Positions 16,193 to 21,942 of a DNA stretch of 64,000 nucleotides are shown here, in pieces. This DNA is from Blastocladiella emersonii ATCC 22665 (taxonomy: Eukaryota; Fungi; Blastocladiomycota), in contig JANHCV010000001.1 in NCBI GenBank assembly GCA_025594325.1, forward strand, positions 2,542,001 to 2,606,000, written 5' to 3'. Made by a program: the position numbers and the translations under genes. The notes beneath the pieces were generated by a model. It ran no database searches. It saw nothing but the letters and a program-made list of their open reading frames with translations, and was not told where the DNA came from. Each line of letters opens with the position of its first letter. Position 1 is the stretch's first letter.

Positions 16193-19100
16193 TCAGTTGT
16201 ACGCCGACCACTCCCCGCCGCCACCGCTTGTCGAGTCGCCGCCGCCCGGCTGCCCTGAACTCGACGGCCTCGACTGCGGCTGCGCGTGCGGCTGTGGTGG
16301 CGGCGGCGCGTAGTACTGCTGCTGATGCAGCAAGTGCGGATGCGGCGGCGGCGGGTGGTGGTGCCCGTAATACGCGGCCGCCGCGACGTGCGGGTCGACG
16401 AGCCCTTGTGGCGGCGGAGCGGGCGCCGAATGAAGCCTTGGCCGACCGGCGGGACCGCGACCCTGGCCCTGGCCCTGGACGTGCACCTGGACGTGGTGGT
16501 AGTGGTGATGGTGGTGCTCTTGCGGCGGCGGCGACGGGCCGAGGGATCCTTGCGACGCGTACAGCGGCGGCGGCGGGGGCGGCGGCGGCATGAGCTGCTC
16601 GGTCGACGGCGCGCGGTAGATATTATGCGTCGGCGCGGCGGTGTGATTCGGGAAGAGCGGCTGCTGCTGCGGGTAGTACGCAGACGCGTGGTGGTGATGC
16701 GCAGGCGCGGGTACGGGCGCGGCGGCGTGCGTATCCATCGTCGAGACCCGCCGCTCGCCGTACACGATGTGCGCCGGTGCAATCGCGTGGCCCTGCTCGG
16801 CCGCCGCGTTGGGCGGCGGCGGGACCGACACCGGGTGCGCCGTCGCGTGCGCGGCGTACTGCTGAGGCGGCGAGAACGGCTGCGCGCCTTGCGCGGGCGG
16901 GTACGTGAACTCTGGCGCCGGTGCTGACATGGGAGCGGGCGGCGCGCGGTACTGCTGAGGCGCTGAGGGCCGGCGCTGTTTGACGGGCACCGCCGCGACG
17001 GCCGCGGGCGTTGCAGCGGGCGGCGGCGCCTGCAGCTGCGTCAGGAGCATCGCGACGTCCACGTCGTTCATGTGCCCGCGGCCGTTGCTCGACGGCGCCG
17101 CCGGCGGGAGCCCGCTCGACGCGGAGCCGGACGCGGCGCGCGAGCGAGATGCCGCGGGGTACGGCTGGTGGAACTGAGGGCCGACGACGGGGCTCGGGGC
17201 GCTGCTGGAGTGCGCGGGCGGGTGCTGCTGTTGCTGCTGCGGGCGCGGCGGGGACAGCGACGGCGAGCGGCCGCCCGAGCTCTCCGAGTCGTTGAGCAGG
17301 AACGAAATGGACATCTTGGGCGGCATGGGCGGCGGCGGGGCGGCGCGCGCGAGATGGACGGGGGCGGTTGCCGCAGCTCCGAGCAGCGAGACCTGGGACG
17401 CGGGAACCGCAACGGGAGCATAATGAGCGGGATGCGCCGTGTGACCGTGCGCGAGCAGCGGCGTGGGCGCGACGGATGACACGGCGGCAGCGGAGGGGGC
17501 CTGGTAAGCGTACTGCTGCTGCGGCTGGTAGGCCTGGTAGTACGACTGCTGCTGCTGCATTTCCACGGTCGCGTCAGGTACAGGCCGAATCGGCCGCGGC
17601 GCCGCCGACGCGCGGCGACTAAGCACCGGACCCACCGCCGGCGACCCCGCAACGACCGCGGGCGACGCGACCTGCGGCGACGGTGCAGCCGACGTGGCCG
17701 TGGACCCCGTCCCGTTGGACGCGAGCGCGTTCGCCGCCGACGACGCGGCGCGCGCCGAAAGCGTGGCGGCTGCGGCGCTCGAGAGCGCCCTGGCGCGGCT
17801 GGCTCGCCGGCCCTTTTTCTCGACGGCGGGCTCGAGGAGCGGGCCCGGGACCGGCGTCGTGGGCTCGGACGACGCGGCGGAGCCGGGGACCGAGGGCAGC
17901 GCGTCGTCGTCCGTCTTTCGGCGTTTGCGCGGTGCCTTGGGCTTCGCGGTGGCGGTCGTGGTCGTGGTGGATGATAGCGGGGCTGCAGCGGCGGACGCGG
18001 CGAGCTTGCGCTTCGGTTTTACCGCGGTCATCACGGGTTCGAGGGCCGAGGCCGGGACGTCGAGGCCCACGCCGACGGCAGGTGCAGGTGCTGTCGCGAG
18101 CGTCGCCGAGGATGATGTCGGCACGGCTGGTGCTGGAGCTGCGGGCGGAGCGACTGCAGGTGGAGGAGGACTTTGTGCGGGTGCAGCCGGCGGCGGTGCA
18201 GGGGCGGGCTCGACCGTCGCCGACTCTACTGCTGCAGGAGCAGGAGCACCAGATACGGGTGATGGTCCAGCGACAGTCGACGCCGGAACGGCGAGCGCTG
18301 AGGTAGGCGAGCCGGATGCGGCGGGCGACACCGCGGACGGCGCATCGGCTGCCGGTGCGACGGAGGCGCGGGGCGACGGCGGCGGTGGCGTCCTCGACGT
18401 CGCGCGTACGACTGGCGCTGTCGCAGCTGGAGAGTTTGGTACCTCCGAAAGCAGCGGCGACGAGGTACGCGGCGGCGGATCCGACCAGAGCGGCGAGGAT
18501 GTGCGCGGTGGCGAAAACAGCGGCGACGACGTGCGCGGTGGCGAACCGGCTCGCCCCGCAGGAGCAGGGAGCGGGGCAGGCGATGGTGGGGCGACCACGA
18601 CGATAGCCGGTACTGGCGTCGCGGACACGTCGAGCGGTCTTGTTGGCGCGTCGCGCTTGGGCGAGACAGCAGCAGCAGCATCGACGGTCGCCGCCGCGAG
18701 CGGTACAGGCGCGGCCGTCGCATCGACCGGCGGTTTCACGCGGATCGCTGTAGCGTCCGGACTCGACGACCCAGCGGCTCCGCTATCCACCGCGAGCTCG
18801 GCCGGCGGCGGCGCTGCAGCATCGGGCACGCTCGGCGGATCCACGTCCATGGCCTCGTCAACGGCCAGATCCGCGTCGACCGTCGCCGGACCCGGCTCCG
18901 TCCCCGCCGTTGGCCCACGGTCGGGCGATCCAGCCCGCGATATTGGCACCCGCGGCGAGATCGGACCCGGCGGCGGGGGCAACGGCGGGAGCGGGGGGAG
19001 CGGAAGCGCTTTGCGCAGCGGCGACGGGGACCGCACAACAGAGACGGGCGCGACAGCGGGTCCGGGCGACCCGTCGAGGTCCATGGGCTCCGACCCGCCC

Positions 19101-21942
19101 TCGGACTCGAGCCCGGGCTCGTCGACCGGGGAGAAGACGCGCTGGGCGACGCGAGCCGAGGGCGGGGTCGCGGCGGCCGATGAGGGCTCGGCGGACGGCC
19201 TGGACTCTGCCGCGCCGAGGCGGGCGAGGCGAGGTGATGGGGCCGATGGCTCGAAGCGCGGCCGCGGCGGGAGCGAGTGGACGGTGGTGTCGGTTGCCGC
19301 TGCTGGAACGGTGCGGGTTTGACGAGGCGGCGAGCGCGAGGCAGGGACGCGTGACGGTGCTGCGAGCGATTCCGCGCGGGGAGGACGGTCGCGGGAGCGC
19401 GAACGCTCGCTCGCCGCGTCTGCCGGTGCGACGGGTGAAGGAGCTGCTGCTGGCTCGGCGCCGTCGACACGCACTGTGGACGCGGTGCGCGGGGATGCAG
19501 ACCGCGGAGGCGATGTCCTGCGAGGCGCGCGAGCCGAAACAGCGGTCGTGCTGGAATCAGACGCGCTCCACGGCTGCGACGGCGCAGTTCGCGGTCCAGC
19601 CGTCGCAAGATCGGACGTGACAAGCGGCGCGAGCGGGCCCGCCGGATCCGCAGCACTCGGGCGGCGGCGTTTGACGATGCCCGAGTGCCCAGCGTGAGAC
19701 GCTGGTGGGGCACTGGTCGAGTCAGCGGCGCGCGGCGGGAGCTGCTCGGCGCGCGGCGGGAGCTGCTCGGCGGGATCCTCGGTGAGCGTCGCGAGAAGCG
19801 AGCCCGAGGACGACCCGGCCGAGTCGGGCCGCCGCGCAAACGGTGGCCGAGCCGCGGGCGCGTCCGTGGGCGATGTACCCGCGCGGGTCGGCGAGTGGGT
19901 CATTTCGGACGACGCGACGAGGCCCGGCGAGCGCATCGGGGCGGTCAGCAGGAGATGGTTCGCCGAACCGTTCCCGCGAACCAACTCGTGCGACGGCAGC
20001 TGCCCGGGTGACACGAGCAGCGAGTGGGATGACGACCGGCGACGGATCCCTGACGCCGGCGGCGGCCCAGCACTCGGCTCGTGCGGCGGGAGGTGGTCGG
20101 GGAACGGCCCGCTGTGCGAGGTACGGCGCGCGGCGGGGAGGTGCCCTGCGCTAGCCGACGGGCTGAGCAGGTTATCGCTGGACGCGGACCGCGCGACCTG
20201 GTGGTTGTCCTTGGCCGCCTCCTTGCGGGCTTTCCACGCAGTCCGGATCGCGTCGCCGCGCGCGCGCAGCTCGGACTCGCGGATCCCGTTGATGAGGAGG
20301 TACCGGCCCGCCTGCACGGACGCGGCCGACGACGGCACGCTCGCGTCGTCGCGCCAGCGGACGAAGCGCCACCCGCCGCGTCGGGGCTCGCTGCCCGGCG
20401 CATCGCTGCTGCTGCCCGGCGCATCGCTGCTGCTGCTGCGGCCGACGAGCTGCGTGCGGTGCCGCTCGTCCCATGCAAACTCGCCGACGCGGTCCTGCGG
20501 CGGGTCGGCTTCCCACGCGGCGGCCAGGTCGTCGGGCGGAGAGATGTCGTCGATCTCGTGCAGCTGCGGGTCGGTGGGCGCCGAGTCCTGCGCGACGAGG
20601 GCGACGTAGCGCGGCACGCCCGTGCCGGCGGCGCGCCGCGTGCGGATGAGGAGCAGCGCGGTGTAGAGTTCTGGCGGTCGCCACTTGAGCCTACGTGAGC
20701 GAAATAGCGCGTTAGCTCGGGAGCGTGGCAAAGAAAGCGGGAACCACGTACACTTTGGAGCACGGGCCTGAGACGTAAGGTGCGTGGACGGGCGTGAAGA
20801 CGAGGCCGTTGCACGGGTACCGCAGGTGCGGGATAATGGTGTCGAGGACCTTGGCGAAGCCGTAGGAGCGCTCGACGCGGCCGAGGTCGAGGACGAACTG
20901 CGGGACGAGGCCGGGCGTCGACTGCAGCTGTCGCGCATGCGGTTTGATGACCTCGGCGTTCATAAAGCCGAGGCGGCGGTCGAGCGACTTGGTCGCAATG
21001 TCGGTCTTGCCGTGCAGCGCGAGGAGATCAGTGCACAGGAAGCGATGTCTGCCCTGTAGGAACGGCGGGCGGGCGGGTGGGCGGGTACGGAGGAGGTGGC
21101 GAGAAGGAGAGTCGAGTGGTGAGCGAGCGGGTACGGGTACGCCGTGGTGCGGACGAGGACATACCGACCGGCCCGGGACACGCTCGAGGACGAGCTCGCC
21201 GTCGATGAGCGTCTCGTGGTGCGGGTCGCCCTGCGGCGTCGGGAAGGACATTTCGATCTTGAAGACAGAGGCCCGCCGGTCGATCTGGAGGGAGGAAACG
21301 GGTTAGTTGGCAGTCGTCGGCGACGCGGCGAGCGAGAAGCCGTACCATGTACACGGCCTTGCTCGGTCGGTCGAAGAGGAGCAGGGCGCGCAGGCCGTTG
21401 GGCTTCTCGCGCACGTAGTAGTCGTCCTGCTCGAGCAGGCCAATGTTGTTGGCCTCGAGGGCGGCGGGGCGAGTGCCCATGAACCTAGAGAAGAGGGATC
21501 AAGGGTGAGTCGCGGATGACGTGCTCGAAACTGCGGGCGCGCGCGCGTACTCGTTGGGCGTCGCGTGGCCGGCCAACTGCCGCGCCGTGTTGAGCACCGT
21601 GGCGAGGAGCGGGCCGTGGACGCGCTCGCCGATGGGCGCGGGCGGCGCGGTCCTTGGCGAGAGGGCGTGGTGGGTGGAGCCGCTCGAGCCGGGGCCGTGT
21701 GCGTGGTGGTGGCCGTGGCCGTGGCCATGAGCGTGATGGGTCTGCGGCGGCGGCGGATGATAGAACGCATGATGGCCGTGGTGCGCAGAGCGCGATGGTG
21801 GGCCGTCGGTGGATCCGCTCGTGGGTCCCGCGCTGCTGCTCCAGCTGGCGCTCGCAGGCGGGTGGTGATCCGCGGCGGCGGACGGTGGTGGGCCCGGCGG
21901 TGGCGGTGGCGGAAGCCCGGGCGCAGGCGGTCCGGGTGCCAT
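16193..21942 (-). CDS. Divergent mRNA guanylyltransferase (Ceg1)-like protein with a long disordered C-terminal tail (1816 aa)
   Basis: Exons 21942-21551, 21484-21346, 21284-21165, 21053-20752 and 20690-16193 (5451 nt, frame intact), four canonical introns. Motifs in the correct order: YYVREKPNGLR (I), LIDGELV (III), FLCTDLL (IIIa), NGLVFTP (IV), LKWRP (V), WRFVRWRDD (OB-fold/VI). Confidence 0.85.

What the first reader, a model, noticed from the sequence alone, without database searches (positions are those of the whole stretch)
20170..21942. Capping-enzyme paralog that keeps the catalytic Lys but has five of six nucleotidyltransferase motifs rewritten
Seen after splicing: motif I KPNG (canonical KxDG), III DGE intact, IIIa FLCTD (canonical aromatic-FD), IV NGLVFTP (canonical DGLIF), V KWRP (canonical KWKP), and VI RWRDDASVP (canonical RxDK..PN). 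The N-terminal FPGSQPV-type segment reads FMGTRPA. Known: these positions contact GTP, metal and pyrophosphate in Ceg1-family enzymes, and capping is essential. Inferred: this is unlikely to be the housekeeping enzyme. It is either a pseudoenzyme that retains RNA or Pol II CTD binding, or a neofunctionalised nucleotidyltransferase with another NTP or acceptor (KxNG also occurs in fungal tRNA ligase motif I). The four introns and 5.4-kb frame are intact, implying selection. This is the strongest candidate for undescribed biology in the window.
Basis: partly seen in the sequence, partly recalled or inferred. Interest (0 to 1): 0.8.

Follow-up and report, generated by a model that had tools for sequence, protein, structure and literature searches.

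The report
Degenerate second capping-enzyme paralog, Blastocladiella
This gene of the water mould-like fungus Blastocladiella emersonii is a second, long-tailed copy of the mRNA capping enzyme. It has lost residues the enzyme needs to bind GTP but keeps the surface that docks on RNA polymerase II. It belongs to an old, apparently undescribed paralog family of early-diverging fungi that has lost its catalytic site many times.

Summary
A five-exon gene on the minus strand (21942..16193) encodes NCBI hypothetical protein H9P43_000944 (1813 aa) of Blastocladiella emersonii ATCC 22665. Its N-terminal 400 aa is a capping guanylyltransferase fold: Pfam PF01331 at 125.7 bits, AF2 pLDDT 92, Foldseek best match S. 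pombe Pce1.

The genome also holds a fully canonical CEG1, H9P43_006081, on another contig, so this gene is not the only capping enzyme.

The gene is not a recent copy of CEG1 (AU p 0.0018). It groups (96/91) with an ancient clade B of long-tailed Ceg1 paralogs found in chytrids, Zoopagomycota and Mucoromycota. It shares their OB-hairpin insert and GGW signature.

Twelve catalytic or nucleotide-contact columns are invariant in 49 intact sequences. This protein differs at six of them (D69N, F144T, K195G, D219N, K242R, motif VI K→A), plus C65R and Q45R. It keeps family-typical residues at the Pce1 Pol II CTD-docking positions. Clade B lost catalytic residues at least nine separate times; canonical Ceg1 never did.

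Best reading: a GTP-inactive pseudoenzyme that still docks on Ser5-P CTD and presents a 1330-aa disordered tail. No biochemistry or RNA evidence was available. An earlier scan note had flagged the canonical copy.

The parts
21551..21942 (-). Exon 1: start codon and a P/H/G-rich low-complexity N-terminus, then the N-terminal helix of the guanylyltransferase (GTase) domain
   Evidence: Gene model; identical to NCBI protein P0001
21485..21550 (-). Intron 1 (66 nt, GTACGC..CTAG)
   Evidence: It is needed to join the frame to FMGTRPA. The NCBI model agrees.
21346..21484 (-). Exon 2: FMGTRPA segment (21483-21463; Pce1 Q45 becomes R) and motif I VREKPNGLR (KPNG at 21405-21394; Lys kept, C65R, D69N)
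   Evidence: Pfam PF01331 positions 2-42; column table
21285..21345 (-). Intron 2 (61 nt, GTACGG..CCAG)
21165..21284 (-). Exon 3: motif III DGELV (21203-21189), intact. The NCBI model ends this exon at 21169.
   Evidence: Pfam positions 43-85
21054..21164 (-). Intron 3. My boundaries are GTATGT..ACAG (111 nt). NCBI uses 21049-21168 (GTCGGT..GCAG, 120 nt). The two differ by 3 aa in a variable loop and are unresolved without RNA data.
   Evidence: no RNA run was listed
20752..21053 (-). Exon 4. It carries motif IIIa FLCTD (21041-21027; the guanine-stacking Phe becomes Thr) and the CTD-dock loop TKSLDRRLG (20993-20967). It also carries LGRVERSY (20885-20862; the guanine-O6 Lys becomes Gly, dock Tyr kept) and motif IV NGLVFTP (20810-20790; Asp becomes Asn).
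   Evidence: Pfam positions 90-188; alignment to Pce1 4pz6; column table; Pce1 residue roles from PMC4066402
20691..20751 (-). Intron 4 (61 nt, GTACGT..GTAG)
20200..20690 (-). Exon 5, first part. It carries motif V LKWRP (20689-20675) and the OB domain. The OB domain holds a 36-aa hairpin insert (20473-20372) that includes a SSSDAPG x2 micro-duplication (20434-20393). [quoted passage not shown]
   Evidence: AF2 model pLDDT 91.9 with an OB fold; Foldseek match to Pce1 over about 390 columns; insert statistics; no PF03919 hit
16193..20199 (-). Exon 5, remainder: a disordered tail of about 1330 aa rich in P, A and S, ending at the stop codon. The only loose match to the clade-B tail motif is KMSISFLLNDSE at 17317-17282.
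   Evidence: Composition and pattern test (31 of 5000 shuffles match). HMMs of the clade-B tail motifs score no better than shuffles.

Best explanation
The gene encodes a diverged member of an ancient second lineage of fungal capping-enzyme homologs. I call this lineage clade B: a guanylyltransferase (GTase) NTase+OB core followed by a long disordered tail.

B. emersonii caps its mRNA with the canonical paralog H9P43_006081. This copy has lost residues needed to bind and activate GTP. These are the guanine-stacking Phe, both guanine-O6 contacts, the motif I and IV aspartates, one motif V lysine and the motif VI lysine. It is therefore most likely inactive as a guanylyltransferase.

It still folds as a capping enzyme. 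At the positions that in S. pombe Pce1 hold the two Ser5 phosphates and Tyr1 of the Pol II CTD, it keeps residues typical of the family.

The proposed mechanism is that it docks on Ser5-phosphorylated Pol II early in transcription and uses its 1330-aa tail to bring or exclude other factors. It would act as a scaffold or competitor rather than an enzyme.

Shown: the gene structure, the fold, the paralogy, the residue changes and the family pattern. Inferred: loss of activity, CTD binding and the scaffold role.
For: - Canonical paralog in the same assembly with all motifs intact, plus a PF03919 hit.
- Careful IQ-TREE: canonical clade A has 100/98 support and contains P0217. The group {clade B + P0001} has 96/91 support.
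- A recent Blastocladiella-specific duplication is rejected (delta lnL 39.6, p-AU 0.0018).
- P0001 scores 262.8 bits against a clade-B HMM and 188.8 against a clade-A HMM.
- Shared derived characters. The OB hairpin insert is 24 aa in 33 of 34 clade-B sequences, against a median of 10 in clade A; P0001 has 36. GG precedes the motif VI Trp in 34 of 34 clade-B sequences and in P0001.
- Twelve catalytic or nucleotide columns are invariant in 26 clade-A plus 23 intact clade-B sequences. P0001 differs at six of them, plus C65R and Q45R. Residue roles are taken from the Pce1-GMP structure paper.
- CTD-dock columns in P0001 are K157, D160, L163, G164, L194, Y201, R364 and K368. Most match residues that are common in the family, and the main dock positions also hold in all 11 other degenerate clade-B members (residue roles).
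- Clade B needs at least 9 independent losses of the catalytic set and clade A needs none. Degenerate members have longer branches.
- AF2 gives pLDDT 91.9 and pTM 0.88. The top Foldseek hits are Pce1, Cgt1, human RNGTT and Ceg1.
Against: - No enzyme assay, binding assay or RNA evidence exists; no RNA run was listed.
- The Lys nucleophile, motif III Glu, motif IIIa Asp, both Gly residues, the first motif V Lys and the motif VI Arg and Asp are retained. Residual or altered nucleotidyl transfer is therefore not excluded.
- KxNG is an accepted GTase motif I variant.
- The AU test does not reject placing P0001 beside clade A (p 0.165). P0001 is a long, compositionally deviant branch.
- The clade-B C-terminal LDFILN-type motif could not be demonstrated in this tail.
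- The CTD-dock inference is transferred from one yeast structure, and R157K is a substitution.
- No close ortholog was found, so selection could not be measured with dN/dS.
Confidence: 0.6

Rival explanations
1. It is a neofunctionalised covalent nucleotidyltransferase. The retained Lys nucleophile works with a rebuilt base pocket (C65R, F144T, K195G) to use another NTP or another acceptor. It might for example make a non-guanosine 5' cap or modify a protein.
For: Lys67, motif III Glu, motif IIIa Asp, Gly70, Gly220, Lys240 and the motif VI Arg and Asp are retained. The changes are concentrated on guanine-specific contacts. The fold is intact.
Against: Motif IV Asp becomes Asn and the motif VI Lys becomes Ala. 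Both positions are invariant in all 49 intact sequences and serve phosphate or metal chemistry common to the superfamily, not base choice (established knowledge of covalent nucleotidyltransferases, recalled from memory). Half of the other degenerate clade-B members have lost the Lys itself. The family's conserved function therefore does not need catalysis.
Confidence: 0.13
2. It is still an active, if sluggish, GTP-dependent capping enzyme. It would be a second capping activity, for instance stage-specific or cytoplasmic.
For: Kx(D/N)G is accepted for GTases. K242R is conservative. Most clade-B members keep a complete catalytic set, so the clade's ancestral function may be enzymatic.
Against: Six positions that never vary in 49 intact sequences are changed together. 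These include the guanine-stacking Phe and a guanine-O6 Lys. The branch is the longest in the tree.
Confidence: 0.1
3. It is a gene in decay, a relaxed or non-functional duplicate that has not yet been broken.
For: The end branch is the longest in the tree, 2.17 against a median of 0.62. There are in-frame micro-duplications. There is no Pfam OB hit, no expression data and no demonstrable clade-B tail motif.
Against: The duplication is ancient, yet 1813 codons and four introns remain intact. The core folds with pLDDT 92. Structural and CTD-dock columns keep family-typical residues.
Confidence: 0.08
4. It is a recent Blastocladiella-specific duplicate of CEG1 that diverged fast. On this view it would not be a member of an old paralog family.
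For: Both B. emersonii proteins have unusually long tails. P0001 is a long branch, which can be misplaced.
Against: The AU test rejects P0001+P0217+P0228 as a clade (p 0.0018). P0001 carries the clade-B insert, GGW and EF characters, which P0217 lacks. HMM scores favour clade B by 74 bits.
Confidence: 0.04

Closest known systems
S. pombe Pce1, C. albicans Cgt1 and S. cerevisiae Ceg1 (canonical fungal mRNA guanylyltransferases; PDB 4pz6, 1p16, 3kyh)
   Same: It has the same NTase+OB two-domain fold with a C-terminal crossover helix (Foldseek E 1e-30, TM 0.76). The motif order is I-III-IIIa-IV-V-VI. The Lys nucleophile is present, and the CTD-dock positions carry family-typical residues.
   Different: It differs at six otherwise invariant catalytic or nucleotide-contact columns, plus C65R and Q45R. 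It has a 36-aa OB hairpin insert and a 1330-aa disordered tail. It lies outside the canonical clade.
B. emersonii H9P43_006081 (P0217), the canonical CEG1 of the same genome
   Same: It is in the same genome and the same superfamily, and it is also unusually long (1609 aa).
   Different: Identity is only 27-32%. P0217 has every canonical motif and a PF03919 hit, and it sits in clade A with B. britannica P0228. Its tail carries DDDFQVR-type repeats that are absent here.
Clade-B long-tailed Ceg1 paralogs of early-diverging fungi. Examples are Spizellomyces SpCBS45565_g05002, Batrachochytrium dendrobatidis BATDEDRAFT_89511, Rhizopus delemar RO3G_08194 and Gongronella butleri P0002. They are annotated only automatically.
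   Same: These give the best sequence identity (38%), and the tree groups them with P0001 at 96/91. They share the OB insert, GGW, EF and the AWKAR helix. They have a long disordered tail and coexist with a short canonical Ceg1 in the same species. Several have also lost catalytic residues.
   Different: Most members keep a full catalytic set and end in a conserved basic-KLDFILN motif (36 of 50). That motif is not demonstrable here. P0001 has its own combination of substitutions and the longest branch.
Fungal tRNA ligase Trl1 (motif I KxNG; recalled from memory)
   Same: It belongs to the covalent nucleotidyltransferase superfamily and has Asn in motif I.
   Different: P0001 has no ligase, kinase or CPD architecture and no Pfam hit other than PF01331. 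All its nearest sequences and structures are capping enzymes.

Membership tests
Ceg1/Pce1-type mRNA guanylyltransferase (EC 2.7.7.50) | NTase domain plus OB domain fold | tested here: met
   PF01331 at 125.7 bits. AF2 pLDDT 91.9. Foldseek best hits are 4pz6 and 1p16 at E 1e-30 over about 390 columns. Pfam PF03919 (OB domain) is not detected.
Ceg1/Pce1-type mRNA guanylyltransferase (EC 2.7.7.50) | Motif I Kx(D/N)G with the Lys nucleophile | tested here: met
   KPNG is present. The Asn variant is allowed according to PMC5027499. Asp is nevertheless invariant in the 49 intact fungal sequences.
Ceg1/Pce1-type mRNA guanylyltransferase (EC 2.7.7.50) | Invariant catalytic residues of motifs IIIa, IV, V and VI | tested here: not met
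   The changes are F144T, D219N, K242R and motif VI Lys to Ala. Each of these columns is invariant in 26 clade-A plus 23 intact clade-B sequences.
Ceg1/Pce1-type mRNA guanylyltransferase (EC 2.7.7.50) | Guanine-specific contacts (Pce1 Cys65 and Lys195 to O6) | tested here: not met
   C65R and K195G. Residue roles are from PMC4066402.
Ceg1/Pce1-type mRNA guanylyltransferase (EC 2.7.7.50) | Formation of an enzyme-GMP adduct and capping of ppRNA; essential function | not testable with these tools
   This needs biochemistry and genetics.
Ceg1/Pce1-type mRNA guanylyltransferase (EC 2.7.7.50) | Orthology to canonical fungal Ceg1 (clade A) | tested here: inconclusive
   The tree places P0001 outside clade A, on the clade-B side, with 96/91 support. 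A clade with P0217 is rejected. A sister position to clade A is not rejected by the AU test (p 0.165).
Clade-B long-tailed Ceg1 paralogs (defined here) | OB hairpin insert of about 24 aa with GG before the motif VI Trp, and EF on the preceding strand | tested here: met
   P0001 has a 36-aa insert, GGW and EF. Clade B has 24 aa in 33 of 34 sequences and GG in 34 of 34. Clade A has a median of 10 aa and no GG.
Clade-B long-tailed Ceg1 paralogs (defined here) | Groups with clade B in phylogeny and profile scoring | tested here: met
   Support of 96/91. A 74-bit advantage for the clade-B HMM over the clade-A HMM.
Clade-B long-tailed Ceg1 paralogs (defined here) | Long disordered tail after the AWKAREK helix | tested here: met
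   The tail is 1333 aa, of which 51% is P, A or S.
Clade-B long-tailed Ceg1 paralogs (defined here) | C-terminal basic-x-LDFILN-type motif | tested here: inconclusive
   The protein ends in EWSAYN. Motif HMMs score no better than shuffles. One internal loose-pattern match, ISFLLN, occurs (31 of 5000 shuffles match, a post-hoc test).

The most novel reading that the evidence does not exclude
The retained Lys nucleophile and a rebuilt base pocket could make this a nucleotidyltransferase with a new substrate. That substrate might be a non-GTP nucleotide or a non-mRNA acceptor, and the enzyme would be delivered to Ser5-P Pol II by the conserved CTD dock. If so, some fungi would place a non-canonical 5' modification on nascent transcripts.
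Probability: 0.08. Interest if true: 0.9.

Novelty: new variant of a known kind. Interest (0 to 1): 0.62.

Why it matters
Capping enzyme is treated as a single essential gene in fungi. The data here point to an ancient second lineage in Chytridiomycota, Blastocladiomycota, Zoopagomycota and Mucoromycota. It was not seen in Dikarya among the hits examined.

This lineage keeps the capping-enzyme fold and the Pol II CTD-docking residues, and it carries long disordered tails. It has discarded its catalytic residues at least nine separate times.

That pattern is what one expects of a protein whose main job is to read the Ser5-P CTD rather than to cap RNA. If confirmed, it would be a new class of CTD reader or scaffold derived from an enzyme. 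It would also give a natural series of active and inactive forms for studying how capping-enzyme recruitment is coupled to early elongation.

The B. emersonii gene is the most diverged member found.

Tried and rejected
- **RNA evidence.** The look-up of sequencing runs listed no RNA run. Expression and the intron 3 boundary therefore stay open, and read laying was not used.
- **Close orthologs.** The word search on the OB part found only the protein itself and Gongronella. The exhaustive representative search found nothing above 38% identity. A metagenome scan found nothing. No dN/dS could be computed, and there is no evidence that the exact variant set is conserved.
- **FastTree on 201 sequences.** It placed P0001 with other long, unnamed branches outside both fungal clades. 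I treated this as long-branch attraction and replaced it with the C20 mixture-model tree.
- **Recent duplication from CEG1.** Rejected by the AU test.
- **Tail-motif homology.** HMMs of the C-terminal LDFILN block and of the Mucoromycotina SSIHxLLT block find nothing in the P0001 tail above shuffles. Look-alikes at aa 533-541 (SSSHSLLVS), 1443-1448 (ISFLLN) and 1524-1533 (VDVAMLLTQL) remain anecdotal.
- **Full-length AF2 of a short clade-B protein (P0004).** The C-terminal motif forms a helix with pLDDT 63-69 in an otherwise disordered tail.
- **Literature.** Searches for a second fungal capping-enzyme paralog or a guanylyltransferase pseudoenzyme found nothing relevant. The primary Ceg1 mutagenesis papers were not held. 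Statements on the essentiality of motif IV and VI residues therefore rest on the invariance measured here and on memory.
Full report
**Observation and gene model**

The window is about 70% G+C. On the minus strand, five exons join through four GT..AG introns of 66, 61, 111 and 61 nt. The exons are 21942-21551, 21484-21346, 21284-21165, 21053-20752 and 20690-16193. Together they give an open 5451-nt CDS.

A word search with the last exon returned a 100% identical 1813-aa protein. It is hypothetical protein H9P43_000944 of Blastocladiella emersonii ATCC 22665 (P0001). It lies on contig JANHCV010000001.1 of assembly GCA_025594325.1, among ordinary housekeeping genes.

The NCBI model differs from mine only in intron 3. 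NCBI uses 21049-21168 and I use 21054-21164, a difference of 3 aa in a variable loop. Using NCBI's boundaries reproduces P0001 exactly.

Exons 2, 3 and 4 match Pfam PF01331 colinearly, and the spliced domain scores 125.7 bits.

"Rewritten" overstates it, because each motif keeps its framework and carries point substitutions.

**Fold**

An AlphaFold2 model of aa 96-480, built on a 40-sequence alignment, has mean pLDDT 91.9 and pTM 0.88. Confidence is low only in the OB hairpin insert.

Foldseek ranks S. pombe Pce1 first (4pz6, E 1.4e-30, TM 0.76). C. albicans Cgt1, human RNGTT, S. cerevisiae Ceg1 and the Chlorella virus enzyme follow, and DNA ligases come far behind.

Pfam does not detect the OB domain (PF03919) in this protein. 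It does detect it in the canonical paralog and in other clade-B members.

**A canonical CEG1 exists in the same genome**

An earlier scan note (s1-276426) mentioned a capping enzyme with a long tail on another piece of the genome. I found it independently.

The exhaustive representative search with the domain returned P0217. The cluster look-up names it as H9P43_006081 of B. emersonii ATCC 22665. It lies on JANHCV010000007.1 of the same assembly.

Its motifs are all canonical: FPGAQPVSF, KTDGIR, DGELIL, FLVFDCL, DGLIFTS, KWKP and RFRTDKNTAN. It hits both PF01331 and PF03919.

The refuting condition "it is the only CEG1" is therefore not met.

**An old paralog family, not a recent copy**

Word searches with relatives showed many 560-2100-aa proteins with a capping-enzyme domain in Mucoromycota, Zoopagomycota and Chytridiomycota.

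Cluster names showed that the same species or genera also have a short canonical enzyme of 350-470 aa:
- Geranomyces: P0146 beside P0030 and P0033
- Phycomyces: P0151 beside P0008 and P0010
- Geosiphon: P0155 beside P0028
- Blastocladiella: P0217 beside P0001

I built an IQ-TREE LG+C20 tree of 69 domains rooted on non-fungal sequences. It gives these groups:
- Clade A, canonical Ceg1, at 100/98. It holds Dikarya, the short proteins of early-diverging fungi, P0217 and B. britannica P0228.
- The group {clade B + P0001} at 96/91.
- A and B together against the outgroup at 98/96.

P0001 sits at the base of clade B on the longest end branch in the tree (2.17 against a median of 0.62).

The AU test rejects a Blastocladiella-specific duplication (delta lnL 39.6, p 0.0018). 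It does not reject a position beside clade A (p 0.165).

Independent characters favour clade B:
- A clade-B HMM scores P0001 at 262.8 bits and a clade-A HMM scores it at 188.8. The control P0217 behaves the opposite way.
- The OB hairpin between the GRIxEF strand and motif VI is 24 aa in 33 of 34 clade-B proteins, against a median of 10 in clade A. It is 36 aa in P0001, including a SSSDAPG tandem duplication.
- GG precedes the motif VI Trp in 34 of 34 clade-B proteins and in P0001, but in no clade-A protein.

**What changed and what did not**

[quoted passage not shown] With these I tabulated 18 nucleotide or catalytic columns and 11 CTD-dock columns.

Twelve catalytic columns are invariant in all 26 clade-A and all 23 intact clade-B sequences. 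In Pce1 numbering they are K67, D69, G70, motif III E, F144, D145, K195, D219, G220, K240 and K242, together with the motif VI R, D and K positions.

P0001 differs as follows:
- D69N, in motif I
- F144T; in Pce1 this Phe stacks on guanine
- K195G; in Pce1 this Lys bonds guanine O6
- D219N, in motif IV
- K242R, in motif V
- Motif VI Lys to Ala
- C65R, the other guanine O6 contact
- Q45R, a ribose contact

The CTD-dock columns behave differently. K157 (R in Pce1; K occurs in 8 of 26 clade-A sequences), L163, G164, L194, Y201, R364 and K368 all carry residues that are common in the family. D160 matches Pce1 itself.

The main dock positions also hold in all 11 other degenerate clade-B proteins (R or K at 157, G164, Y201, R364, K368).

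**Family pattern**

Clade-B members with a broken catalytic set include the following:
- Batrachochytrium dendrobatidis and Polyrhizophydium, which have no Lys
- Basidiobolus and Tieghemiomyces, with Lys replaced by Gln
- Gongronella and Hesseltinella, with CDRNLAAR in place of motif I
- Mortierellaceae, with KVAG and EGL
- Dimargaris verticillata
- One of two Absidia glauca copies, with KSNG
- Mycotypha, with NGI in motif IV

On the tree this requires at least nine independent changes in clade B and none in clade A. Degenerate members lie 1.4-2.2 substitutions per site from the clade-B root, against a median of 1.18 for intact ones. That comparison is not corrected for phylogeny.

Thirty-six of 50 clade-B proteins carry a basic stretch followed by an LDFILN-type motif at or within about 30 residues of the C-terminus. 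In chytrids the motif reads WLDxVxN. Catalytically dead members carry it too.

In a full-length AF2 model of a 563-aa member, this motif is a short helix of intermediate confidence in an otherwise disordered tail.

In P0001 the motif cannot be demonstrated. One internal loose match exists.

**Mechanism**

The most economical reading has three parts:
- Clade B's conserved function depends on the capping-enzyme fold, its Pol II CTD dock and the tail, not on nucleotidyl transfer.
- The B. emersonii copy is an inactive form.
- It docks on Ser5-P CTD and presents a long disordered tail as a scaffold, or as a competitor of the true capping enzyme.

Loss of activity and CTD binding are inferences from sequence and from one yeast structure. 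They are not shown.

The rivals are a retargeted nucleotidyltransferase, a weak but real GTase, and a decaying gene. They are listed with their tests in the Rival explanations section.

**Comparison with known systems and literature**

The nearest characterised proteins are Pce1, Cgt1 and Ceg1. The protein fails membership as a functional guanylyltransferase on the catalytic and guanine-contact columns, and it is not the canonical ortholog.

KxNG alone is not disqualifying, since a review writes the GTase motif as Kx(D/N)G (PMC5027499).

Full-text searches found no paper on a second Ceg1-like lineage in fungi or on a guanylyltransferase pseudoenzyme. The library is incomplete, so this is absence in what was searched.

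Public records name these proteins only automatically. Many are misnamed 'Dcp1p-Dcp2p decapping enzyme complex alpha subunit'.

**Limits**

- There are no RNA data.
- No close ortholog was found.
- No model coordinates were available for contact analysis.
- P0001 is a long, compositionally biased branch.
- The absence of clade B from Dikarya rests only on the hit lists examined.

Noticed in passing
L002:1119-2765 (JANHCV010000007.1), next to the canonical CEG1 at L002:3001-9539: A Vps5-family gene lies directly beside the canonical capping-enzyme gene. Sordariales records (P0050-P0061, P0065) are about 1000-aa 'capping enzyme alpha subunit-like' proteins carrying PX and Vps5 Pfam domains. This suggests either conserved CEG1-VPS5 adjacency with fused gene models, or a real fusion.
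   Followed up: no
P0217 aa 449-560 (L002): The tail of the canonical B. emersonii capping enzyme carries five acidic-Phe-x-Val-Arg repeats: DDDFQVR three times, plus DNFEVH and DGFEVRR. B. britannica's ortholog is only 545 aa long.
   Followed up: partly
window 20393-20434 (-) and elsewhere in exon 5: An in-frame tandem micro-duplication, SSSDAPG x2, sits inside the OB hairpin insert. The tail also shows AEQLPPR x2 and PPRTSSPL x3.
   Followed up: partly
window 21049-21168 versus 21054-21164 (-): There are two alternative in-frame GT..AG solutions for intron 3. The NCBI model uses a weak GTCGGT donor, and a GTATGT donor lies 4 nt downstream. The proteins differ by the 3 aa 'SGR'.
   Followed up: partly
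Public annotations of P0007, P0013, P0030, P0037, P0127, P0131, P0135, P0146 and others: Many capping-enzyme homologs of early-diverging fungi are named 'Dcp1p-Dcp2p decapping enzyme complex alpha subunit' in NCBI records. This looks like a propagated misannotation.
   Followed up: no
P0132 versus P0025 (Calcarisporiella thermophila); P0014 versus P0015 (Absidia glauca): There are lineage-specific duplications within clade B. Calcarisporiella has a tail-less 442-aa copy beside the 1320-aa one. Absidia glauca has one intact and one degenerate copy (KSNG, LLEWKP, FCDDK).
   Followed up: partly
window 17694-19322 (+) and other long ORFs overlapping exon 5: ORFs of 200-540 aa lie on the opposite strand and in other frames of the tail region. 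They are expected by-products of about 73% G+C and are not evidence of genes.
   Followed up: no
Tails of Mucoromycotina clade-B proteins (alignment A3): Two further conserved tail motifs are restricted to Mucorales and Umbelopsis: SSIHxLLTTSVEP and VQFINFHAE. The first is a short helix in the AF2 model of P0004.
   Followed up: partly
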